Below are positions 24,549-55,032 of a stretch of DNA of 64,000 nt, piece by piece (the first letter of the stretch is position 1; each line of letters begins with the position of its first letter). A program made the position numbers and the translations under genes. The notes under the pieces are model-generated. The model made no database searches and was not told the origin of the DNA. It saw only the letters and a program-made list of their open reading frames with translations. The DNA lies in assembly GCA_038496445.1 (NCBI GenBank), contig JALMLS010000420.1, positions 558,001 through 622,000 of the forward strand. The letters are read 5' to 3'. The DNA is from Trichosphaerium sp. ATCC 40318. Lineage: Eukaryota > Protista > Tubulinea.

Positions 24549-27481
24549 TTATGTGTTATCACTGAATTCATTCTTACAAGGTGAAATATTCCGCTTCAAG
24601 AAGCGTAGTATCTCTGAAAATACCAACTTTTTGTTGTCGTATAACGTTACACCATGACCTTCATCTTCAAGTCTTAACAGACGACAAGGTACTCGATCCT
24701 GTATAATATCATAAAATTGTTCTGCTTCTGTAATAGGCACGCGCTCATCCATAGCACCTGACAAACAAGTTAGAAAACAATTTTTTGCATAAGTAAGAAA
24801 AAAAAAGGAAAAGCGAATACAAGTGGAACGAGGTTCTTGCGATACTGAGCATAAAATACAAAAAAGGAAAAGTTAATACCATAAATCATTAGAAGAGGAG
24901 CCTTCAAGTTTTCAGCCTTGTTGATGGGACTTATCATTTGTAGTACATCCAAGTCATGTTCAAGTGATCCATATTCTTTTTCACGTTTTGCACGCCTCCA
25001 AGATGCAGTGTTCTTGAGGAACGAGACATAGTTCGTAACTGTTCAGCAATTAGAAGGCAATACCACAATACCACCACAAACAAATCAGTTCGTACCTCCA
25101 CACATGCATATGCCGGCATCAAAAGCATCAGGGAACTGAGTCAAGCAGCTAAGTGTAGCAAAACCACCGTAACTAAAAAAACGTGGTAAGTATAGTTTAA
25201 CGCAAACTACTGTTTGTAAAATCTAACGTCTTAGGTACCTTCCACCCATAACGCAAACTTTGTTGCCCATGTCGTTGTCGTGTATTCTTAGGTGTTTTGC
25301 AAGACATTTTATATCTTGTATAGCATTCAAACGTAATTCTTTATCATCAAGAGCGAGGTACTTCCTTCCGTATCCTTTCAATAAGTTAAGGAGGTTTTTT
25401 TTGAGCTATTACGAACCTGCGCTTCCTCTGATATTGGGTACAACTACAGCGTAATCCATAGCAAGAAGGAATTGCACTCGAGGTTCAAATTGACATTTCG
25501 CTTGTTTTTCAGGGCCACCATGTACCATTATAATGACAGGGAACCCTTCTACAGGGCGTTCCTTTGCTTTCTAAGAGGTTTTTTTTTAGTTTTTGTTTCA
25601 TGAAATAAAGCGCAACTCTTACCGGTATGTACCGCCAGTATGGTACTTTCAAGTCATCAAAACTATTAAAGTCCCTAAGAGAAGGACATACAAACCGTGT
25701 TTGATCTAAGCCTCCGGTGTGTACATCAGTGAGTTGCCAAAATTGTATCTAGAGAAACAGCTGTTAGCAACTTCATTTGATTATGTTACTTACATTTTTT
25801 GTTCTTGTGCTTGCTACCCAGATATTGCATGGTAAAGTAGGTGTAGTAAACGATACTGCAATAAGATTTCCATCGTCACTAATACTTATAGGATCTGTCC
25901 AACACCTTGAATCCGCAGAATACAACATTCCTTCAACAGGCAAAGGTACTTTTGTTATCAGGCTTTTTCCTGAAATTTCTATTGTCGCCCTATACAAATC
26001 AATCACGTACAGCGCTAGATATAATTCTAGCATTGCGCTCTAAGGTACCTGTACAAGTTCATAAATCCGTTAATATTCTGACAAAAGAACACAAGATTGT
26101 AACCGAAGTAAAAATCACGCCGAAGAATAACAGTTTCGGGCTCAATTTCGTAGCTAGGATCGACACCCTGAATTTCATTAATACATTAGCATTAAACACA
26201 TGTTTGAGTTTAGAATAAAAAGCCGTGTACCTCAACAAAGGTTAACGTATTATTTTTAGTGTTAACAACCGCCAAACTCATCTTGTCACGTGAGAAATCT
26301 GTTGATGAATTTAGTGTTGTTGGCTTTCTTTACAAATTTTTGTACCTGTGCACACTAGTATATGATCTTCGTCCATCCATCCGACACCATACCATCTCCA
26401 TTCGTCTGTAGACTCTTTGGATAGTTGTTCTGATGACCAACTCTCTTCCTTCTTCATGACATCGTAAAGAACAAGGTTTTGATTGACATTACTTATTGTT
26501 ATTTCAATCAATAAGAATTTATCTTCTAAACTCGCACTAACTTTTGGTATAGACCGATGAATACTTGGTGTATACCTAAAGGAGAATATCAAAACGCCAG
26601 AAACCGAAACGGTTCAAAGAGGTTGATCAATCGCCAGAATGCTAGTTTCAATAAAATTGCGCTAAAACACGTGTTCACAAATTATACGTACACAAGTTGA
26701 GCAGTGTTCTTGCGAACAGGTATACGCCATCTGTAGATGGAGAACTGAGACTTCATGTCAATATTGGCTCGAAAATACATGTATCTATTAGACGCTAATA
26801 GTAGATTGTGTCTTAGTGTTTGCAATAATAATACTGTATTTAAGTTTGTACTTACTATGCGAAATTATATGCTTTGCTGCTCTGTCTGTTGTTATAAGAC
26901 GAGAGAAAACATTTGTGTCACTTGACACTTCATTGTCAATGATACCGATTTGAAATGCTTCGTTTCCGTTCATGTCAGTGTGATACACAACAGTACCTTT
27001 TATCTAGGGTTAGTTTAACGTAGAAATCAGAACTTATTAGCACCGTCTCGAAGAAAGTATGGTTGAGTGCATCGCTACGATGGATTTTAGATAGTGCAAA
27101 GAAAACTGGAGTTTTCGTGCGTACCTGTGTACTGAACGTTGTCCTGGTTGGCCACTATTAATCCTTTAACATCCTGGTCGGATAACAAGTTAATATTCAA
27201 GCCTGTACCATTGGCCGTCGAACTTCTGGATCCTAATAACGTTATACTCAATACCGTAGAGTAGGTTGTTTGGTGTGTACCACCATAATACTCCAAATCT
27301 GAAATTTGCCTTCATCTGAATCATAGCAGAAGCAGAGCTCGTATGGGCCATCCTTATGCGTAGAAGTATTAGTTTTTCCACTGTTTCTACCGATTTAGAA
27401 GCTTTTTCGCACTTTTGTAGGATTGAACGTTGGTCCTCCCGCTCTTTCTGTACGAAGATATCTTCCTCCGTTGTTACCCAT
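24549..27481 (-). CDS. S9 family serine peptidase (prolyl oligopeptidase/acylaminoacyl-peptidase type; beta-propeller + alpha/beta hydrolase)
   Basis: Start MGNNGGRYLRTERAGGPTFNP; MVHGGPE, PNIRGSAG; catalytic GGSYGG (split by an intron), GAMDERVP and EDEGHG give a full Ser-Asp-His triad. Confidence 0.9.
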
Positions 27482-27673
27482 GTTAACGTCTTAAGAAATA
27501 CAGATATTTTAAGGTCTTGTCTTCTTTTGTAACGAACGTCCAGCTTAGCCTTTACCTGCTGTTCAACAATAGGATTTTGGTGGCCAAAACCATCTGAACA
27601 TCTTATGATTTTGAACAATAGTGTTTGCTTGTCAAAACATTTTTATAGTTTTTACACTCTACAAGGGCACCTC

Positions 27674-30600
27674 ATGCTTACTAAAAGTTCATCAAAGGGT
27701 GCATTGCCAATGTCTAAAGTTCAAATAGACATTTTGGTTCTTTCGGACCATCGAACGATGAAAAAGACAAATTCATTGCTTCATATCTTTGCAACGCTTG
27801 CGAAACATCCAAGCATTGGATCCGTAAGTATTGCAAGTCGAGGAAACCGAGAAAACAAGGACTTTTTCTACAACTATGGCGGACACGAGTTGGTTGTTCA
27901 GAGCGTAAAGGATTTATCAACGGAAGACTACTTGGATCAAACAAACTGCTGTAGCGCATCGGTAGTACAAAATTACCTAGCGTCAATACCCCTAACACAG
28001 TTTGTAGCTACTCGATTATGACTTTGTTTTTAACCGGTAAGTTGTTTCTTTTTCTAGACAGTATTTTTATCAAAGTCTCCATTTGCTGTTTTCAAAAAAA
28101 AACATTTCCGCGTGATAGCACGTGCAAGTATTTTTTGTGCATTTTTTTTGCCTAATTTTCTTCCTTTTTCAGCCTTTCAAGACCAGTCGCTGATGCATTC
28201 TACGATTTTTTGCACCAATTTATCAATACTGAAAATATTATAAATAACGCTGCAGGCGCACGACTTTGTGGTACGTCATTACATCCCCGAAATTGTTTCT
28301 TGAAAATAGAAAAAAAACAAACAATCAACTAAAATATTCTTCAGGATCAAAAGTGTATCTTCTTAAATTCCCGCAACTAACAACGAAAACAATCCTATGT
28401 AAAAATGTAGAAGATGTCAAATCGTTTTTTGAAGAGCATAAAGACGGTACAAAGTGAAGTTATTATCAAGCTGATTATGTAATACAGTTGGTATTGTGCT
28501 AAAGCCTCTAAATGATGGAGGAGGCAGAGGCCTTGTATCTATTAAATCGACTGGCGTATCACTGGAAGGTATGCAACTAAGTTTAAGCTCAATAGATCAT
28601 CACTGAGTTCGTTGCTAGGAAAGAAATCGCTGGGCCTGAAAGAGTTTTGGCCCATTCTTTCAAAACAGCTAGAATCAGAGCATATGATTGCTATGCGCTT
28701 CTTAAAAAATGTTGGACAAGGCGACAAGAGAGTGCTTGTTGTTAATGGCGAGATTGTTGGACAATCATTGCGTGTACCAAAGAAAGGTAACTGGATGTGC
28801 AACGTTTCTCAAGGAGGCAGTGTTGAGGCATGTGATGTTAAACCTGAAGAAGTTGTTATATTCAAAACACTTTGGGAAGATCTTTCTAAGCATGGTATTG
28901 TCATGTTCGGTTTTGATACTCTTGTTGGAGATGATGGTAAAAGAGTACTGTCAGAAATTAATCCAGGGTATGTATTTTGTAAAATACTCAGTCACGTGAT
29001 GTTAATTTTGTTGAAGAAACGTTGGTGGGTTTGTAAATGGCTTACCAAGCAATGAAGACACTTTATCAAAAACAAGCAAATTGCTTGCTAGCCATATGCT
29101 CAATATAATGAGAGGTCATGTAGAACACGGTATTGATATAGTAAAGCTTGTGACATACTATGGTCGCAACAGGTATGTTTTTGAAATCTTTACAACGTTC
29201 TGACAAGAATAGGTTTTTTGAAAGACAAGTTGTAATGGTCCTTATTGAAACAAGTCAAGTTGAGGACTTGTACATCAAAAATCGGGCCAATATTCTAAAG
29301 AGGCTACGATCAGAGTTTCTCGGATTTGAAGCTAAAGATAATGCTAACCTTGGAGACGTTACAGCGTGCCTTGGTGTTGCACTTCAAGTGCGAAAAAACA
29401 ATCGTAGTTTATCCTTTATTGTAACTTTTTAAATTAGAGTGCACGTGTAAGTGTTGCTAAGATGTATTGGAATTCTTTAAAAACAAAAATACAAGATAGT
29501 GACTATCAAGTAATTTTTGAGTACGAAGATGTTCCAGAAATGGGTGCGTAACACAAACTTTATAAAGGGGTTTTTTCTTCGTTTTTGAACATTATTGCTT
29601 CTGTGAGACAGTTTCTTACTTGCGTTTAGGAAAGTTGATCGCACGAAAGACTGTGGCGATACTCAATCTTCTTGTTACTGACTGTAACGCTTCTTTTGAT
29701 GGAATCGATAGCAAGTTTCCTATTAGTAACTATTTTCTTGGTCCAACTGTTCGTGCTATTGCTCTAGAAGCATCAAGGAACAATATTCCGTTTTCAAGAC
29801 TTGCCAAAACAAGTCAACTTATTCAGCTCGGTACGTGATACAATAACTCCGCCCGGCACCATATTAGGTTTGTTATTCTGAGTTTATCTTTAGGCCAAGG
29901 TTGTAAATCAAAGTGGTTTCGAACACTTGGTTCTTTCAACAGTAACATGAGCAACGAAATATCCGACAACAAAGAAACAACAAAGAGAATTCTTGCTAGT
30001 GTTGGTATCCCTGTACCACGTGGTCTTGTTTGTTCAAATTTGGCTGATGTGTTGGCTGCAAGTAATAAGCTTGGATGGCCTCTCGTCACAAAGCCAACCG
30101 ATTCTAAGGGAGGCAATGGTATCACTGTTGATATAAACGATGAAGAAAGTCTCAAGCAGGGTAAGTGCTTACCGTACTAGATCGTTGCATAGATTTACGA
30201 CTAACAATTAACTAGGGTATGAATTCGCTTTGCAGTTCTCTGCCAAAGTAATTTTGGAGCGTTATGTCAGAGGAAACGACTATAGAGTTTTAGTTGTATA
30301 CGACGAAGTCGTAGCAGTTACGCACAGGCTACCAGCTTTTGTGGATGGTGCGTACCCTGAGAAGTATTTTTGATTGGACTGGTACTAACAATGGCTTCAG
30401 GTAATGGTGTTAACACAGTCCAAGAGCTCATAGAAATAACAAACAAAGATCCAAGACGAGGACAATCTCATGAGAATGTTCTTACTAAGATTAAGATCGA
30501 TGGACCTCTTATTTCAACGTTAAAGAAGCAAGAAATGGATTTAAATACTGTTCCAAAAGATGGATTGCGAGTGTGGGTGAAAAGTACTGCTAACTTGTCA

Positions 30601-32558
30601 ACTGGTGGTAAGTCTTAGCTTATTATGTTTGACTTGAAAACTGGAGTAATGCATTTTAGGTGTCGGTATTGATGTGACCGACAGTATTCACTACCAAAAT
30701 AAAATTTTGTGTTTGCGTGCAGCTAAAGCAATTGGTTTAGATGTTACTGGAATTGGTGAGTGCAAGGAGAATGCAGTTCTTTTTTTCTCAGTTTTTTCCA
30801 CTTTTTTTTACATGCGTATTTGGTGCTTACTGTTTCGCAGATATTCTCACCACTGATATTTCTCAACCAATAACAGAAATCGGGGGTGTTATTATTGAAG
30901 TTAATTCAAGGCCTGGTACAAGAATGCACTTATCCCCATATCAGGTACGATCAGCTTGTTTGTTGGGTTTTTTATCGTTTTTTTTAACCTTATTTTCAGG
31001 GAAAACCTCGTGATCCAACGCCAAAAGTAATATCTCACATGTTCCCATCATTATCCGCTCGTATTCCTATAGTTGCCATCGCAGGTAGTTTGGGAAAGAC
31101 AACAACCGCAAAGATGGTTCAGCATATCCTACAGTACGCCAATTTTATAAAAACCACCTTCAAAGTCACTCCAGCTTACCATCTTCCATAGGAACACAGC
31201 TTATAATGTACGCTTAATTCTTGGAATATCAATGGTCGTAATTCAATGTTTGTTGACTCTTGCTAGGTCGGAATGGCTGTCACGGATGGTATTTTCGTTC
31301 AAGGAGTTCAATACCAGACAAGAAGCGCTCATGATTCTTGGGGTGCAAAGACGATTCTTAGAGATCCTACAGTCACTATTGCTTTACTTGAGCTTTCTCC
31401 AGATACAATCCTAAAGCAAGGATTGGTATACGGAGAATGTGATATCGCTGTACTTACAGGCATAAATGATAACTCCGAACTCCTAAAAAAAACAGCTCTT
31501 GGAACTGTTTCTGAGCCTTTGGAAGGGTTAGTATTGAAATCACTGAAACCTGAAGGAAGCACAGCTGTAGTAGATATTGATAACGATGAAATGGGATCTT
31601 TGATTAACGTACCAAAAGACTATCTTGAAAAACTCCCACTTAACAGCTACCACTAGAATTATCCTGGAGTAAACTTTATTTACATAACGACTAATCTCGA
31701 TCACCCTCTTCTACAGACCCAGGATTTTATTGAGAACGGAACTGCTGTTGTTGTAAGAGATGCCTCTATCTGTATTATGAAAGGCACAAAGGTCACACAG
31801 GTATTTAGCAATAGGACCTTCAACACTTACTGTTTCAGTTTTTCTCATTTTTTTTGAAGGTAATTGATTTGAAGCTCATCCCTGCAACGTTTCATGGAAT
31901 TCTTGAAGTGAATGTCTATAACTGTTTGTCAGCATTCGCTACTGCTTATGCTCTGGGTATACGTGTCGAAAAGATAAAATATGCGTTGAATTCCCTTCGA
32001 ATTCAAGCTATCCCTGGAAAGATGAACATCTTCTCTTATGTAAATGGTTCACATATCTTGGTGGACTCTCCGTCTTCGTTGACAGCAATTTCTGCGTTGG
32101 CGAAGTTTGTACAGCGTATGAAGACTGGCCCTTTGAATGTAAGTCATGCCACCAAAGATGTCTAGTAGTACTAACAAGCTTATTTAAGGTCGTTAGAGCA
32201 ACAATTTTAAGTGCACTTTCGACAAACTTGACAACCAAGTTTATTGAGATTTACAGTGCCAAGCTTTCTCAAGTGTTTGATAAGGCTTTGGTAGTCACAA
32301 GTGTTGCTCAAAACAAGTACATTGAGATGTTACCTAACAATACACCTAACGTATGTATCATTGTAAAGACTTACATTCTTTGGCTTATACCTTTTTTTAC
32401 AGGCACCAACAGTTGTGTTCATGAAAGCTTCTTTGGAAAGCTCGATCACTTACAGCTTGGATATGCTAAGAGGAAACCAAGAGTTATTAGTAGTCATGAC
32501 AGATAGACCTTCAATAGTCGTTGAAATGCTTGAAGATACATGTGTTCCTTTATCTTAA
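27674..32558 (+). CDS. cphA: Fusion of GshB-like ATP-grasp ligase with cyanophycin synthetase-like protein (N, G/ATP-grasp and degenerate M/Mur-ligase domains), multi-exon
   Basis: GshB-like: VLKPLNDGGGRG, GQGDKRVLVVNGE, WMCNVSQGG, GFDTL...LSEIN. CphA-like: LGPTVRAI, QLGQG, DNKETTKRIL..GIPVPRG, PLVTKP, GNDYRVLVV, NKDPRRGQSHENVLTKI, TANLSTGG, IEVNSRPGTRMHLSP, RIPIVAIAGSLGKTTT, ILRDPTV. The junction is stop-free inside one exon (about 29017-29172). Confidence 0.88.
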
Positions 32559-32714
32559 TCCAAATGAAGAAAAAAAAAGAAACTCTTGCTTGTAAATAAA
32601 ACCTATAACTATGACTTACTATATTTGTGAGAATGCTATGATACCTTCGCATTTTCTTTCTGTTTTTACATTTATTATCAGCTGTACACAATTAGGGCTT
32701 TTAGTTCTCCACTT

Positions 32715-34569
32715 CACAAGAACAAGTGTTTTGACCTTACTTTAAGAATTCTAAGGAACCACAGTGAGTAAAAAGTTTATGTGGAGTGGATTATAGTTAC
32801 CTCTGTATAGAACGTTTGTTTCTTTCATTAGAGAAGTCGTCAAGTGACCAATCTAACTCTGGATAATATCTTTTAAGTAATTTTGGCATTAGTATTGTAA
32901 ATGTTCTTCCTTTATAGTCACACAGCTGCTGATATGATACACGACACCTAAAGCAGTGAATTAATTTCATTAAGCAAAATGTGAGTCATACCAATCACGT
33001 GGGTTTGATATATTCAATGATAACTCAAGTTCCCTTATATACCTTCTCACGTTGTTCCATTTACCCCAAAAGTTATGTCTATAAGAGAATGAGATCATGT
33101 GTGACATGTAAACGGGCTCCCGTGACATACTTGACTGGGTATTGTGAGTCATACCACGTATACTCAGGGTAGGCGACTTTTAGTACATCACGCATGGAAC
33201 TGTACCTGTACGCACGTTCAATGAATGTAAAGGAAAAAATTCTAAACATACCTTCTACGAAGGTGATACCCTCCATACTTTTGTACTACTTTCCATGATG
33301 ACTTGTCGTACCAATCTGATAATATCCGTATGTTAAGTCGACTACCAATATCGTCAAGCAAGGCACGATAGTGTAAACCATTCTTCTCCTGAAGCGACAA
33401 TGAAGCGTTTTTGTTCGCAGACCTTATTTTTTGTTAATTTTTACTGTGAAAAGACTTCAATGTAAATTTGTACCGTAGTGACCTCCAATCATGCCCAGGG
33501 TACATCTTTTCAAGAGCCTTATCAATGTTACCACCGTATCTTTGAATCTGATTAGAAAAGAACTACAACAAAAAACGAAGTTGATTGTACTTGTGATTGA
33601 CTATGGTGCCTACACCACATTCTGCTTTTGCCAGTATCTCGCTTGGAACCTTTACCCAATCCAATAATATCTTCACACCCTTTTCACGCCCAAGTTTATC
33701 AAAACGCATACGTTGATTGTCAATACTATCCCAATACCTTTGAGGTGCATTCCTTTATCCAAAAATTAGTTTCAAAACAAAAAGTTCTACTCAGTACTTG
33801 AATCTCCATGCTTCCCAGTTATGTTTAGAAAAGTTTGATTGCATTAAGTTGTACAAAGAGTGGTTATACCTTGATTGAAGTGTAAGTAAATCATAAAAGG
33901 GAACAGAGTTATCGACTCTAATACAAAAAAAAATCATACTTGTTTAGTAAAGTACCACCATTTGCTCTTGCAAAGTCTTCAGTGCTAATGTCATACCACC
34001 CACCAAGCTCTTTTATACCAAAATCACGTGCAATTGCATTTATGAGGGATATTCTGTTTGCTTTGATATCTAAGAAGCCCTCCTTTGTCTTGCTAATACG
34101 TGCAAAAAAAATTTAATAAAATAGTTTTATTGCTCTTCAAAAAAAAGTGGAGTACGTACTTGAATCGCCACGGGATCCATTCAAAGTCAGGGTACAGTAC
34201 TCCAAGTGTATCTGGTATAGAAGAGCTGTATCTACGAACACCTTAATTACGCTGATACACAGATGTGACGCTTTTTTTTTGGTTTGTACTTTTTTACAAT
34301 TTCTAAGGCTTCGTTTGCATCTTGTTTGGTGAAGGTAGTATTGTACCAATCACCGATTAAATGAACACGAAGTGCTTCAGCAGTATTCTCGAACACTTGG
34401 TGTTGGTTGCGTAAGATTTCAGGTGTCACTGAGATCAACCGGACTGAAACGTCGTTTTTTCGCGTGTCTACGTTTAATGGTAAGTTACAGAGTGCATGGC
34501 ATCAATTAATCGCTTACTTGACCGTGATATTGTACATTTGGTTGTTAAAGGGCGTAAAATAACACTCAT
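32715..34569 (-). CDS. Trp-rich helical-repeat protein (DWY.../YP..W..W.F/YWD...NQR repeats), apparently lacking the C-terminal nuclease domain
   Basis: Repeated units: GDWYNTT, YPDFEWIPWRF, YWDSIDNQRMRFDKLG, LSDWYDK, FWGKWNNVRRYIRELELSLNISNPRDW; 3' end uncertain. Confidence 0.7.
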
Positions 34570-52200: not shown

Positions 52201-55032
52201 TTGTGCAAGTGATGAGTTCATACCACCAAGTACAGTACCGCTTTTTAACGCAACTGCTGCTCAAGGTATAAACAGTTTTATTTTTACTTATAAATTAACA
52301 CATTATCACAGGTGGATTTGAAGGCAATCAGTTATGTCCTTTTACAACAGGAGAACAAGTTCTTATCACGAAGAATATTGAAACTGAGGACAAGTATGTT
52401 TAGACTGCAGTTTTCTGTTGTATACAACCAAACTCACGTGCTTACTCTCTAAGGTATAAGTGGTACTGGTATGCTGCAGTATTAGGATATAGCTTGCTGT
52501 ATAATGCTATAGTATACTTCATCATGAGGTTCTGGAAGGCTGAGAAGCATCATAAGCCTAAATTCGATCGTACAACAAAATACTATCATGCCGTTTATCT
52601 AAACTTTGGTTAGAGGAACTAGCACTTGAGAGAATTACAACCCAAGACACCATTGGAGGTGAATTATTCGATATTGATGGCGCTGCGTTATCTTGGACTT
52701 CTACGTCCTTGAAGATTCCTTCAGGAAGCAGAAAACTTATCATTGATGATGTCAGCGGTTACGTGAAGCCAGGCATGGTATTGGCACTCATGGTACTGTT
52801 GTTACAACAATTGTTACTTGAGCTAATTATTGTTAGGGTCCTTCTGGTGCTGGAAAGTCAACTATCATGGATATTTTAACTGAGCGTAAGACTTACGGTA
52901 AGATCTATGGAGACATTGAAGTAAACAGCGCTGGCAAGCCTCCAAATTTCAAACAAATTATTGGATATGTCGAGCAAGCTGACTTTGTATTTGAGAATCA
53001 AACAGTACGTTTATATCTCTGTGTGTTCATGAAAGATGATTATTTAATAATTTTATAGATTCTTGAGGCAGTACAGTTCTCTGCTCAAACTCGTCTTCCT
53101 GAGGATATGAGCGAAAAAGAGCGTGATAAGATTATTGATCAAGTTATGAGTTTATTGGAATTGACAAAGATTTCTGGTCAAGTTGTTGGTCATGAAGGTT
53201 CAGGATTGAGTAAAGAGGAGCTCAAACGAGTTGCTATTGCTGTAGAACTTGTGACAATGCCTAAAATCTTATTTGTTGATGAGCCAACATCAGGTACTGT
53301 TTTCGGAGTTTTTTCTTGTTTTAGCTTTGCTAATCTAATCTTGAATTAGGTCTTGACTCTTTTGGTGCTGAGCTTGTTATGAACGCAATATCGCGTATTG
53401 CCCAGAGCGGTTGTGCTGTAATTTGTGTCATTCATCAACCTTCAAGACGCATTTTTGAGCTGTGTACTGATATGTTACTCCTTAACCGTTGGGGAAAACA
53501 GATGTTCTTTGGAAAGATTGGAAATCGATCCAAACGTGTTATCAAGTACTTTAAAAACCTTGGATTCAACGTACGTCTTAACACGTGTATGATTAAGTGA
53601 GTTAAATATTACTTAAGTTTGGTAAAGACGAAAATCCAGCAGATGTTGTTTTAAACATTGCATCTGATATATACGCTGCTGAAAATGATACAGATTGTGT
53701 AGCAGAGTTTAAGCAATCGAAGGAGAGAAAAGATATGATTACAACGATTGGTGAGATCAAAAACGAGTTTCAACCTCTTCCTACAAATGTTCCTTGGTTT
53801 AAGTCAGGTTTTTGGCGCCAGCTTAAGGTACATGCCTTACACCGTTATCAATAGTAGTGTTGACAATCGCTTAGGCTTGTACCAAAAGATGGTGGCTTGC
53901 TCAAGCACGTGCCGGACATGAATTGTGGCTTGATTTTGCTCGATCAGTATCTCTAGGTATGCGATTAAAAGTCCTTTTTTCTCTTTGTTTAACACTTTTA
54001 CTCAGGTATACTTATTGGTTTTATGTTTCTTAACATGGAAAGCAATCAAGCTGGTATACTACAACGCCTTACAGTACTCTTCTTCGCTATATTTTATGGT
54101 AACATTAAAGCGTAAGTCAAACTCAGGGACTTATTTCTTTTTTTAATCTATGATATAGTTACTCTGCTATGCCGCGTATATTTGAAGCTCGTCGTGTTTA
54201 TTATCATGAACGTCGGAGTGAACAATATAATGTATTTGCTTTTACCCTAGCCATCCTTTTAACGGATCTTCCGTTAATCTTGTCTGAAACCTTCATATTT
54301 TTTTCAATACCTTATATACTCGCTGGATTGGGTGAAACTGCTGGAGATTACTTTTTCTTCCTACTTTGTGTAGTAGTGTATACATTGGCCTTATTTAATT
54401 TTGCACGCATGCTCGGTACGTCCAAAACAAGGAAAAAAAAAACCAAGTCAGGATTTTTTCTTATTTTTTTCTTGTCTTATTTATCTTATTATGGCTTTAT
54501 TCACTTACACATTACGTTTTTAGGGTTTGCGATGCCTACTAACCAACTTGCCAATATTTTCTTTGCTGCTATGTTTACAGGATTTGCTTGTGTTTCTGGA
54601 ATCTTTATTCCTTATGATGACCAACGTGTTTGGTTCTCTTGGATGTACTGGATATCATTCATTAGATACGGTTTTGAACCACTTGTTATAAACGAAATGC
54701 AAGGTCAAACATTCACATGTGATGCAAATGAATGTACGTAAACGTTTTATTGAATCAAAGCCAAAATATTTTTTATCTTGATCGTGGCTTGATCCTCTGG
54801 CTTGTTTATTAATGTTGCTTTAGTCTTTCAGCTTAACTTCACATCAACTGTTGATAATTCAAGTGTCTCACGATTGATTTGTCCTTTCACTAGTGGTGAT
54901 GATGTTATAGAGTTTTATGACTTTGATAAAGATCTTTTATGGGTTGGTGTTGCTGCAAATCTTGCTTTCTTTGTAGTATACTTTACAGGTGGAAGTATAC
55001 TCCTAAGATATGTTGATTGGACAAGAAGATAA
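49279..55032 (+). CDS. Full-size ABCG (PDR-type) transporter, NBD-TMD-NBD-TMD
   Basis: GGPKSGKT, VSGGEKRRVTIG, FDEPTTGLD; second NBD GPSGAGKST, GYVEQ, ELKRVAIAVEL, DEPTSGLD, IHQPS; ABC2-type TMDs. Confidence 0.95.

What the first reader, a model, noticed from the sequence alone, without database searches (positions are those of the whole stretch)
27674..32558. Eukaryotic, intron-containing GshB-like/cyanophycin synthetase triple-ligase fusion
Seen: one spliced ORF encodes a prokaryotic GshB-type ATP-grasp enzyme followed by all three CphA regions. The junction (LSEINPGNVGG...IDIVKLVTYYGRNRFF) is stop-free within one exon, and many spliceosomal introns argue against bacterial contamination. 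Established: CphA is a bacterial enzyme making multi-L-arginyl-poly-L-aspartate, and GshF/GshAB has a different architecture (glutamate-cysteine ligase + ATP-grasp). Inference: a horizontally acquired, re-engineered non-ribosomal peptide-polymer synthetase in a protist. I know of no described protein with this architecture but cannot search.
Basis: partly seen in the sequence, partly recalled or inferred. Interest (0 to 1): 0.95.

Follow-up and report, generated by a model that had tools for sequence, protein, structure and literature searches.

The report
Eukaryotic GshB-like/cyanophycin synthetase fusion gene
An intron-rich eukaryote expresses, as one mRNA, a 1207-residue enzyme that joins an intact bacterial-type glutathione-synthetase-like ligase to a cyanophycin synthetase whose arginine-adding domain has decayed; no protein with this layout turned up in the databases and papers I could search.

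Summary
Window 27674-32558 (+) holds one 22-exon gene with 21 GT-AG introns, encoding 1207 aa. One spliced cDNA contig of 3596 nt covers it from the 5'UTR to about 48 nt before the stop. The GshB-like/CphA junction lies inside exon 7.

Compared with a 1-3% diverged relative's transcripts, 35 of 40 listed differences are synonymous, so the gene is under purifying selection.

- **N-terminal domain:** it keeps 33 of 34 invariant positions of an uncharacterised GshB/RimK-type ATP-grasp clade. That clade is otherwise made of ~330-aa bacterial proteins in a conserved three-gene cassette, never next to cphA in the loci sampled.
- **G domain:** it is CphA1-grade (75 of 87 near-invariant positions; every literature-defined primer, Asp and catalytic residue except His267, which also varies among bacterial CphA1).
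- **M domain:** it keeps only 29 of 70. The DHLG, D.AHN and GDRR motifs are gone; the ATP/Mg ligands remain.
- **N-domain:** the HxxEH site is lost.

An apusomonad protein (Thecamonas, annotated "glutathione synthetase") pairs the same GshB-like clade with a CphA-G-like domain in reverse order.

Best reading (about 0.45): a cyanophycin-like polymer synthetase in which the fused ATP-grasp has taken over side-chain ligation from M. No protein with this architecture and no paper on a native eukaryotic CphA were found. This is a new variant of a known kind. Biochemistry is untested.

The parts
27674..32558 (+). Whole coding region, 22 exons, 1207 aa. Exons: 27674-27961, 28008-28036, 28173-28270, 28345-28446, 28488-28568, 28619-28967, 29017-29172, 29213-29387, 29438-29543, 29630-29830, 29894-30160, 30216-30347, 30401-30607, 30660-30755, 30841-30944, 31000-31133, 31192-31207, 31267-31608, 31657-31800, 31860-32138, 32189-32350, 32403-32558
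   Evidence: Translation without stops. Fifteen GT..AG joints are listed in cDNA contigs; the other junctions follow from the record-position arithmetic of the 3596-nt X4 contig.
27674..29134 (+). GshB/RimK-type ATP-grasp domain (aa 1 to about 325) plus its C-terminal helix/linker (aa 326-355)
   Evidence: Pfam GSH-S_ATP on exons 4-6. 36-41% identity over about 310-345 aa to ~330-aa bacterial proteins. 33 of 34 clade-invariant positions kept, including K141, K178, GG.G loop, D235-K-R237, R251, N261, D299, E312, N314. Nearest solved structure is E. coli GshB 1gsa, E 1.8e-6.
29017..29172 (+). Junction exon 7: end of the GshB-like domain and the first residues of the CphA N domain in a single exon
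   Evidence: Sequence. Bridged by spliced contigs in X1 and X4.
29135..29734 (+). CphA N domain (aa 356 to about 497), diverged; the HxxEH primer-generating peptidase motif is lost (H79->D416, E82->A419)
   Evidence: Alignment with 65 bacterial CphA1: 7 of 19 (first alignment) or 6 of 19 (second alignment) near-invariant positions kept. Motif defined in PMC9262961.
29735..31065 (+). CphA G domain (aa 498 to about 819), ATP-grasp backbone-elongating domain, apparently intact
   Evidence: 75 of 87 near-invariant positions kept. E550, R641, R655, N726, S728, G788, R790 match TeCphA1 E215, R309, R323, N394, S396, G456, R458. 47% identity to a cyanobacterial G domain.
31066..32558 (+). CphA M domain (aa 820-1207), full length but eroded Mur-ligase-like domain
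   Evidence: 29 of 70 near-invariant positions kept. P-loop K830/T831, T853 and E889 retained. ARGG..R, N...DHLG, VK, LNA.D, D.AHN, GDRR..D and RG lost. All 11 listed differences from the relative in this domain are synonymous.
31192..31207 (+). 16-nt micro-exon inside the M domain (encodes part of ..LQNTAYN..)
   Evidence: 15 extra letters between joint 31134 and 31267 in contigs of X1, X2 and X4 (table 5c). Flanked by AG and GT.
24549..27618 (-). Neighbouring, divergently oriented (head-to-head) gene for an S9-family serine peptidase; not shown to belong to the system
Evidence: C-terminal exon 24549-24764 hits Pfam Peptidase_S9, E 8.8e-6. ORFs on the minus strand.

Best explanation
This is a genuine, domesticated eukaryotic gene of bacterial ancestry. 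It encodes one polypeptide with four modules.

1. An intact GshB/RimK-type ATP-grasp ligase.
2. A CphA N domain that has lost its cryptic peptidase site.
3. A CphA1-grade G domain.
4. A full-length M domain that keeps its ATP/Mg ligands but has lost the Mur-ligase catalytic and arginine-binding motifs.

Proposed mechanism (inferred, not shown):
- The G domain works as in CphA1. It phosphorylates the C-terminal carboxylate of a primer that carries a basic side chain, and adds free aspartate.
- The fused N-terminal ATP-grasp then activates the new beta-carboxylate and attaches the side-chain amino acid or amine. It thereby replaces the decayed M active site.
- M survives as a scaffold, tether or nucleotide-binding module.

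The product would be cyanophycin or a cyanophycin-like branched polyamide.
For: Shown:
- Single spliced mRNA.
- Purifying selection, 35 synonymous against 5 non-synonymous differences, with M at 11 against 0.
- GshB-like domain keeps 33 of 34 invariant positions.
- G keeps 75 of 87 positions, equal to an independent CphA1 (74 of 87). M keeps 29 of 70, against 57-68 in CphA1 and 5-8 in CphA2.
- G-site residues for the primer's Arg side chain (E550), the acyl-phosphate (R641) and incoming Asp (R655, N726, S728, R790) are all conserved.
- At the R458 position the protein is CphA1-like (R790), while the two CphA2 sequences tabulated have L or S. The GHENVLTKI motif is CphA1-type (SHENVLTKI).
- There is precedent for a dispensable, inactive M domain in CphA2 (PMC10273328).

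Supporting the link between the two ligases:
- Thecamonas XP_013753110 and P0160 fuse a CphA-G-like ATP-grasp to the same GshB-like clade, with no M domain at all.
- In bacteria the clade sits next to another ligase-like gene, a ~480-aa protein whose best ESM Atlas look-alike has a predicted fold resembling GshA and glutathionylspermidine synthase (a lead, not a test). So it appears to act in a pair with another ligase.
- From established knowledge: the GshB/RimK/LysX superfamily typically adds an amino acid to a carboxylate of a larger acceptor.
Against: - No biochemistry and no product are known.
- M keeps all four ATP/Mg ligands (K830, T831, T853, E889), which CphA2 has lost, and it is strongly constrained. 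It may still catalyse something.
- The P-loop-G His267 is Gly in this protein. It is Gln in Bacteroidota and actinobacterial CphA1, so it is not invariant.
- GshB-type enzymes normally activate an alpha-carboxylate, not a beta-carboxylate.
- The Thecamonas G-like domain is very distant and not sister to this one, so it may do something else.
- I could not fold or profile the full-length protein, because a spliced sequence has no reference.
Confidence: 0.45

Rival explanations
1. CphA2-like mode. The N-terminal ATP-grasp makes a beta-Asp-X dipeptide from free amino acids. The G domain then polymerises that dipeptide, and M is inert.
For: M is eroded and the N domain is CphA2-like in conservation (6 of 19 against 5-7 of 19). 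CphA2 shows that a G domain alone can build the polymer from dipeptides. In bacteria the clade is paired with a second ligase-like gene, which suggests a two-step small-peptide pathway.
Against: The G site is CphA1-type where CphA1 and CphA2 differ in my sample: R790 against L/S, and SHENVLTKI against TPTSPMSKI. M is full length and keeps its P-loop, unlike CphA2. Few CphA2 sequences were compared, and the literature calls the specificity change 'subtle, cryptic'.
Confidence: 0.2
2. True triple ligase. M is still active but with a new nucleophile or acceptor. The GshB-like domain adds a third step, such as extending the free alpha-carboxylate of the side chain, capping, or making a primer.
For: All four ATP/Mg ligands of M are retained. 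There were no non-synonymous changes among 11 M-domain differences. The N-domain primer-generating site is lost, so a new source of primers could be useful.
Against: The motifs lost are conserved in at least 95% of the 65 bacterial CphA1 compared: DHLG, the conserved Lys, D.AHN, GDRR..D and RG. From general knowledge of Mur ligases, these include second-metal and substrate-binding residues.
Confidence: 0.2
3. Not a polymer synthetase. The enzyme makes a short glutathione-like or isopeptide metabolite, or modifies a protein C-terminus as RimK does.
For: The bacterial clade sits in a cassette with a possibly GshA-like ligase and an AstE/AspA-type hydrolase, sometimes beside polyamine genes. That looks like small-molecule metabolism. 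The Thecamonas protein lacks the N and M domains.
Against: The protein retains the whole N-G-M scaffold and the primer-binding residues E550 and R641 of a polymerase.
Confidence: 0.1
4. Artefact: an assembly chimera, bacterial contamination, or a read-through of two genes.
For: Logan contigs are assemblies, not single molecules. The run types are only guessed.
Against: The gene has 21 spliceosomal introns, all removed in contigs from four runs carrying three organism labels. The junction lies within an exon with no stop or start. Gene GC (about 0.36-0.39) matches its surroundings. Selection is purifying across both halves.
Confidence: 0.02

Closest known systems
Cyanophycin synthetase 1 (CphA1; e.g. 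PDB 7wac, 7lg5)
   Same: Same N-G-M order. The G domain is 47% identical to a cyanobacterial one and nests among bacterial CphA1. All literature-defined G residues are kept except His267. The M P-loop and Mg ligands are kept.
   Different: It has an extra ~355-aa N-terminal GshB-like ATP-grasp domain. M has lost most Mur-ligase motifs (29 of 70). The N-domain HxxEH is lost. It is eukaryotic with 21 introns. Overall identity to bacterial CphA1 is only 31-38% over most of the length.
Cyanophycin synthetase 2 (CphA2; PDB 8fxh, 7ta5)
   Same: The M domain has probably given up arginine ligation. N-domain conservation is similarly low.
   Different: CphA2 M is truncated (protein about 636 aa) and has lost the P-loop. 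Here M is full length with the P-loop intact. The G site is CphA1-type at the R458 position. CphA2 has no fused extra ligase.
Thecamonas trahens XP_013753110 (P0052, 779 aa, annotated 'glutathione synthetase') and P0160
   Same: It pairs a CphA-G-like ATP-grasp with the same GshB-like clade: 36.6% identity to this protein's N-terminal domain, weakly sister in the tree (SH-aLRT 81). It is eukaryotic.
   Different: The order is reversed (G-like first). It has no N or M domain. Its G-like domain is only 26% identical and not sister, and it has Arg where CphA1 has E215.
Bacterial GshB-like clade (~330 aa) in a cassette [~480-aa ligase-like protein] - [GshB-like] - [AstE/AspA-like hydrolase]
   Same: These are the closest relatives of the N-terminal domain: 36-41% identity full length, up to 61% over exon 6. 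Invariant positions are shared.
   Different: They are stand-alone proteins. No CphA-like gene lies within about 10 kb in 80 metagenome loci. Their cassette partners are absent from this window.
E. coli glutathione synthetase GshB (PDB 1gsa) and GshF/GshAB
   Same: Same ATP-grasp subfamily (Pfam GSH-S_ATP). The DKR, R and E.N motifs align.
   Different: The clade scores far below the GshB equivalog cut-offs. No glutamate-cysteine ligase domain is present, so it is not GshF.

Membership tests
CphA1 (cyanophycin synthetase 1) | N-G-M three-domain order | tested here: met
   The alignment covers all three domains of 65 bacterial CphA1.
CphA1 (cyanophycin synthetase 1) | G-domain residues for primer, acyl-phosphate and incoming Asp (TeCphA1 E215, R309, R323, N394, S396, G456, R458) | tested here: met
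   E550, R641, R655, N726, S728, G788, R790. Residues defined in PMC9427784. His267 is Gly here, but it also varies among bacterial CphA1.
CphA1 (cyanophycin synthetase 1) | Catalytically competent Mur-ligase-like M domain (P-loop plus DHLG, conserved Lys, D.AHN, GDRR motifs) | tested here: not met
   Only the P-loop K/T, T853 and E889 remain. 29 of 70 near-invariant positions are kept, against 57-68 in CphA1 controls.
CphA1 (cyanophycin synthetase 1) | Full-length score above the NCBIfam TIGR02068 equivalog cut-off (850 bits) | not tested
   The spliced protein has no reference and could not be submitted. Only exons were scanned.
CphA1 (cyanophycin synthetase 1) | Makes multi-L-arginyl-poly-L-aspartate | not testable with these tools
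   Needs an enzyme assay or polymer isolation.
CphA2 | Truncated M domain without a P-loop; protein about 630-640 aa | tested here: not met
   M is about 388 aa with GSLGKTTT. CphA2 has E/Q-E at those positions.
CphA2 | G site adapted to the beta-Asp-Arg dipeptide | tested here: inconclusive
   The protein is CphA1-like at the R458 position and in the GHENVLTKI motif. The true specificity determinants are not established.
Prokaryotic glutathione synthetase GshB | Pfam GSH-S_ATP ATP-grasp domain | tested here: met
   Exons 4-6; exon 6 E 1.5e-17.
Prokaryotic glutathione synthetase GshB | Equivalog-level similarity (NCBIfam PRK05246 / TIGR01380 cut-offs of 272 / 299 bits) | tested here: not met
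   The closest bacterial relatives P0001 and L087 score 118-135 bits. The window protein itself was tested only as exons.
GshF / GshAB bifunctional enzyme | N-terminal glutamate-cysteine ligase domain | tested here: not met
   No such Pfam hit on any exon.
Uncharacterised GshB-like clade (bacterial cassette) | Clade-invariant residues | tested here: met
   33 of 34 kept.
Uncharacterised GshB-like clade (bacterial cassette) | Adjacent ~480-aa ligase-like gene and AstE/AspA-like gene | tested here: not met
   Present in 62 and 57 of 80 metagenome loci. Absent from this window.

The most novel reading that the evidence does not exclude
This is a third class of cyanophycin-type synthetase, native to eukaryotes. 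A GshB/RimK-type ATP-grasp domain has displaced the Mur-ligase-like M domain as the side-chain ligase. The side chain may not be arginine, since the GDRR-type motif is gone, so the product could be a new branched polyamide. The same ligase pairing arose separately in apusomonads.

A much longer shot, only if the organism is a myxomycete (not verified): a link to an Asp- or malate-type polyanion whose synthetase is still unidentified in Physarum (PMC9210645). I put that below 0.03, because that pathway is reported to go through malyl-AMP, not acyl-phosphate.
Probability: 0.35. Interest if true: 0.9.

Novelty: new variant of a known kind. Interest (0 to 1): 0.8.

Why it matters
- In the literature I could search, cyanophycin synthesis is treated as bacterial. 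'Eukaryotes' appear there only as heterologous production hosts. A native, intron-laden, expressed and selected eukaryotic CphA derivative would extend this nitrogen-storage polymer, or a relative of it, to eukaryotes.
- The domain pattern is a natural experiment in domain displacement inside a well-studied enzyme: intact G, eroded M, and a new intact ATP-grasp.
- It gives a first functional lead for an uncharacterised bacterial GshB-like clade and for the mis-annotated apusomonad 'glutathione synthetases'.
- It could supply new chemistry for engineered polyamide production.
- All of this is directly testable with one expressed cDNA.

Tried and rejected
- **Exhaustive HMMER search.** Exon 6 against 1.84 billion representatives gave no N-G-M fusion among the best 150. 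The only long hits were the Thecamonas type, a TM-domain fusion (P0059) and a 432-aa protein.
- **Word-indexed searches for long relatives.** The Thecamonas GshB-like and G-like regions found only P0052, P0160 and ordinary CphA1/CphA2. P0161 (1059 aa) is a normal CphA1 with a low-complexity tail.
- **Exon 17 search for exon-sized fragments of orthologues.** Nothing found.
- **Bacterial operon origin.** No GshB-like gene lies within 6 kb of 80 bacterial cphA loci. No CphA-like gene lies in 788 kb around 80 GshB-like loci. An operon origin is therefore not supported.
- **Short top hits P0005 and P0014 as possible eukaryotic exons.** They are short metagenome contigs; one shows tandem GshB-like paralogues.
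- **Mixed alignment of exons with P0052 (A2).** It misaligned because both halves are ATP-grasp, so I did not use it.
- **Organism identity.** Not resolved. An ABCG exon only says 'eukaryote', and no note names the species.
- **Full-length steps.** Pfam/NCBIfam scoring, structure prediction and fold search were left out, because the spliced protein has no reference and long sequences may not be typed.
Full report
**1. Is the thing there?**

Yes. I read 27500-32800, translated three frames and built a GT-AG exon chain from the ATG at 27674 to the TAA at 32558.

Public runs hold the locus. Laying four of them on 27400-32800 gave spliced contigs.
- Run X4 has one record of 3596 nt at word depth 260. 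Its listed pieces run 27654-27960, 28617-28966, 29016-29170, 29211-29387, 29893-30159, 30400-30606, 31267-31608 and 31858-32138.
- The gaps in record coordinates equal the summed lengths of my intervening exons: 310, 307, 133, 351 and 144 nt, within 1-2 ambiguous bases.
- So this single cDNA contig follows the whole model, from 20 nt upstream of the ATG to about 48 nt before the stop.

The contigs corrected two points.
- A 16-nt micro-exon at 31192-31207. It shows as 15 letters between joint 31134 and 31267 in X1, X2 and X4.
- An acceptor at 31657 rather than 31717.

The final model has 22 exons, 21 GT-AG introns of 40-136 nt and 1207 aa with no internal stop. Gene GC (about 0.36-0.39) equals that of its surroundings. 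X4 bridges it, as does a 1427-nt contig from a relative (X1).

**2. Is it maintained?**

X1 and X3 (organism A) differ from the window at a little over 1% of positions. Of the 40 listed differences, all are in the CDS; 35 are synonymous and 5 are not. In the M domain, 11 are synonymous and none is non-synonymous. Both halves are under purifying selection.

**3. The N-terminal module**

- Pfam GSH-S_ATP hits exons 4, 5 and 6 (E 3.9e-4, 0.019, 1.5e-17). The nearest solved structure is E. coli GshB (1gsa, E 1.8e-6).
- An exhaustive HMMER scan of 1.84 billion representatives with exon 6 found only 934 proteins at E<=1e-3. The best were ~330-aa proteins at up to 61% identity. Over the full length they are 36-41% identical to residues about 17-348.
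- These proteins are not true GshB. They score 118-135 bits against equivalog cut-offs of 272-299.
- Against 121 members of that clade, the window protein keeps 33 of the 34 positions that are at least 90% conserved. These include the Lys pair, the glycine loop, DKR, R251, N261, D299 and E312-x-N314. It looks like an active ligase.
- In bacteria the clade sits in a conserved cassette. Of 80 metagenome loci, 62 have a ~480-aa gene just upstream and 57 have an AstE/AspA-type hydrolase just downstream. Most misses are short contigs.
- The 480-aa protein has no Pfam or NCBIfam hit. By ESM Atlas features it is near-identical (score 0.99) to a cluster of hypothetical proteins. That cluster's predicted model resembles GshA (PF08886), circularly permuted ATP-grasp and glutathionylspermidine-synthase clusters. 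This is the look-alike's fold, not the query's own, so it is a lead and not a test.
- Two loci also carry polyamine genes.
- No CphA-like gene occurs in the 788 kb of these 80 loci.

**4. The CphA part**

- Exon 13 matches solved CphA1 at E 4.6e-14. M-domain exons match CphA1 only at about 1e-5.
- A genome scan with exon 13 returned 80 bacterial loci, mostly Bacteroidota with some Cyanobacteria and Lentisphaerota. Their cphA ORFs are the usual 870-920 aa and 31-38% identical to the window protein over most of their length. None has a GshB-like gene within 6 kb.
- I aligned 65 full-length bacterial CphA1 and scored the columns that are at least 95% conserved.

| Sequence | N | G | M |
|---|---|---|---|
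| Window protein | 7/19 (first alignment), 6/19 (second) | 75/87 | 29/70 |
| P0161, actinobacterial CphA1 outside the reference set | - | 74/87 | 59/70 |
| Divergent reference-set members L053, L042, L018 | - | - | 57-68/70 |
| CphA2 (three sequences) | 5-7/19 | 60-63/87 | 5-8/70 |

- Lost in M are ARGG..R, N...DHLG, the VK lysine, LNA.D, D.AHN, GDRR..D and RG.
- Kept in M are the four ATP/Mg ligands that Miyakawa et al. describe: K499, T500, T522 and E558, here K830, T831, T853 and E889. CphA2 has lost these.
- In G, every residue that the same paper ties to function is present: primer Arg binding (E215), the acyl-phosphate (R309, G456) and incoming Asp (R323, N394, S396, R458).
- The exception is P-loop His267, which is Gly here. 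It is Gln in the Bacteroidota and actinobacterial CphA1 examples tabulated.
- At the R458 position and in the GHENVLTKI motif, the protein is CphA1-like where the CphA2 sequences differ.
- The N-domain HxxEH primer-generating site (PMC9262961) is gone: H->D and E->A.

**5. A second, independent pairing**

Among the long hits is Thecamonas trahens XP_013753110 (779 aa, annotated glutathione synthetase).
- Its C-terminal half is 36.6% identical to the window's GshB-like domain.
- Its N-terminal half matches the window's G domain (26% identity over 378 aa). Its best NCBIfam match is the cyanophycin synthetase model (190 bits).
- A 62% identical relative, P0160, exists.

In trees, the GshB-like domains of the window protein and the apusomonad pair are sisters with weak support (SH-aLRT 81, quick search, long branches). 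The G domains are not sisters. The window's G nests among bacterial CphA1, while the apusomonad G-like domain sits far away on a long branch.

So the same two ligase families have been joined twice, in opposite orders. This is a 'Rosetta-stone' argument that they work together. The argument is an inference.

**6. Mechanism**

Shown: a single polypeptide; an intact N-terminal ATP-grasp; an intact CphA1-type G site; and an M domain that keeps nucleotide and Mg ligands but not the rest.

Inferred: G elongates a poly-Asp backbone on a primer with a basic side chain. The fused ATP-grasp supplies the side-chain ligation that M used to perform. M persists as scaffold, tether or nucleotide-binding module.

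Precedent: CphA2 works with an inactive M (PMC10273328).

I rate this at 0.45. The rivals are:
- a true triple ligase with a re-purposed M (0.2);
- a small-peptide or protein-modifying enzyme (0.1);
- an artefact (0.02).

**7. Novelty**

- No N-G-M protein with this extra domain appeared in any search.
- The protein itself is not in the libraries searched.
- No paper in the held library describes a native eukaryotic CphA.
- Limits: intron-rich eukaryotic genes are poorly represented in those protein sets. I could search only with exons or with relatives' ids, not with the full-length protein.
- The organism is not identified. Other first-stage notes call it a probable amoebozoan, which I did not verify.

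I file it as a new variant of a known kind (a CphA1-derived synthetase), with interest 0.8.

**8. Context**

The upstream gene, in head-to-head orientation, is an S9-family peptidase. It is not the S51 cyanophycinase family, so a synthesis/degradation pairing is only a guess. The bacterial cassette partners are absent from the window.

Noticed in passing
window 24549-27618 (-): An S9-family serine peptidase gene lies head-to-head with the synthetase, with start regions under about 100 bp apart if the 27618 ORF start is real. It is possibly co-regulated. It is not the S51 cyanophycinase family.
   Followed up: partly
P0052 (Thecamonas trahens XP_013753110) and P0160: Annotated 'glutathione synthetase', but it is a two-ATP-grasp fusion: a CphA-G-like domain plus the uncharacterised GshB-like clade. 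It has Arg where CphA1 has the primer-binding E215, which hints at a differently charged substrate.
   Followed up: partly
L087:8548-11964, L088:3487-6896, L001:3417-9987 and 80 metagenome loci L089-L168: A conserved bacterial cassette, Bacteroidota-rich and often from marine samples: a ~480-aa protein with no family hit (its ESM Atlas look-alike has a GshA/GSP-synthase-like predicted fold), the GshB-like ligase, and an AstE/AspA-like hydrolase. In two loci it sits next to polyamine genes (Arg decarboxylase, agmatinase, deoxyhypusine-synthase-like, AdoMet decarboxylase). In one locus it sits next to Asparaginase_2 and an amidohydrolase. It looks like an undescribed small-peptide or polyamine-conjugate pathway.
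   Followed up: partly
ESM Atlas result for L087:8548-9996: The ~480-aa cassette protein has a near-identical-feature cluster (539 aa) that is 86% eukaryotic, commonest in Mucoromycota. The cassette or part of it may also have reached fungi.
   Followed up: no
L005:93-989: Two GshB-like paralogues in tandem on a short marine contig.
   Followed up: no
L011, L009, L008, L034 (Pedobacter, Myroides, Kaistella): Bacteroidota cphA ORFs of only 571-755 aa, with the highest G-domain identity to the window protein (up to 45%). They may be M-truncated variants or frameshifted genes.
   Followed up: no
window 31192-31207: A 16-nt micro-exon flanked by 58- and 59-nt introns, both with GTACGC donors, confirmed in three runs.
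   Followed up: yes
window 54169-54741 (+): An exon of an ABCG/PDR-type transporter (ABC2_membrane) whose nearest clusters are all eukaryotic. This is consistent with a eukaryotic chromosome context.
   Followed up: partly
P0059 / P0159 (659 aa, Logan): The GshB-like clade fused behind a ~300-aa N-terminal region that looks membrane-spanning and has a zinc-ribbon-like start. This is another fusion partner for the clade.
   Followed up: no
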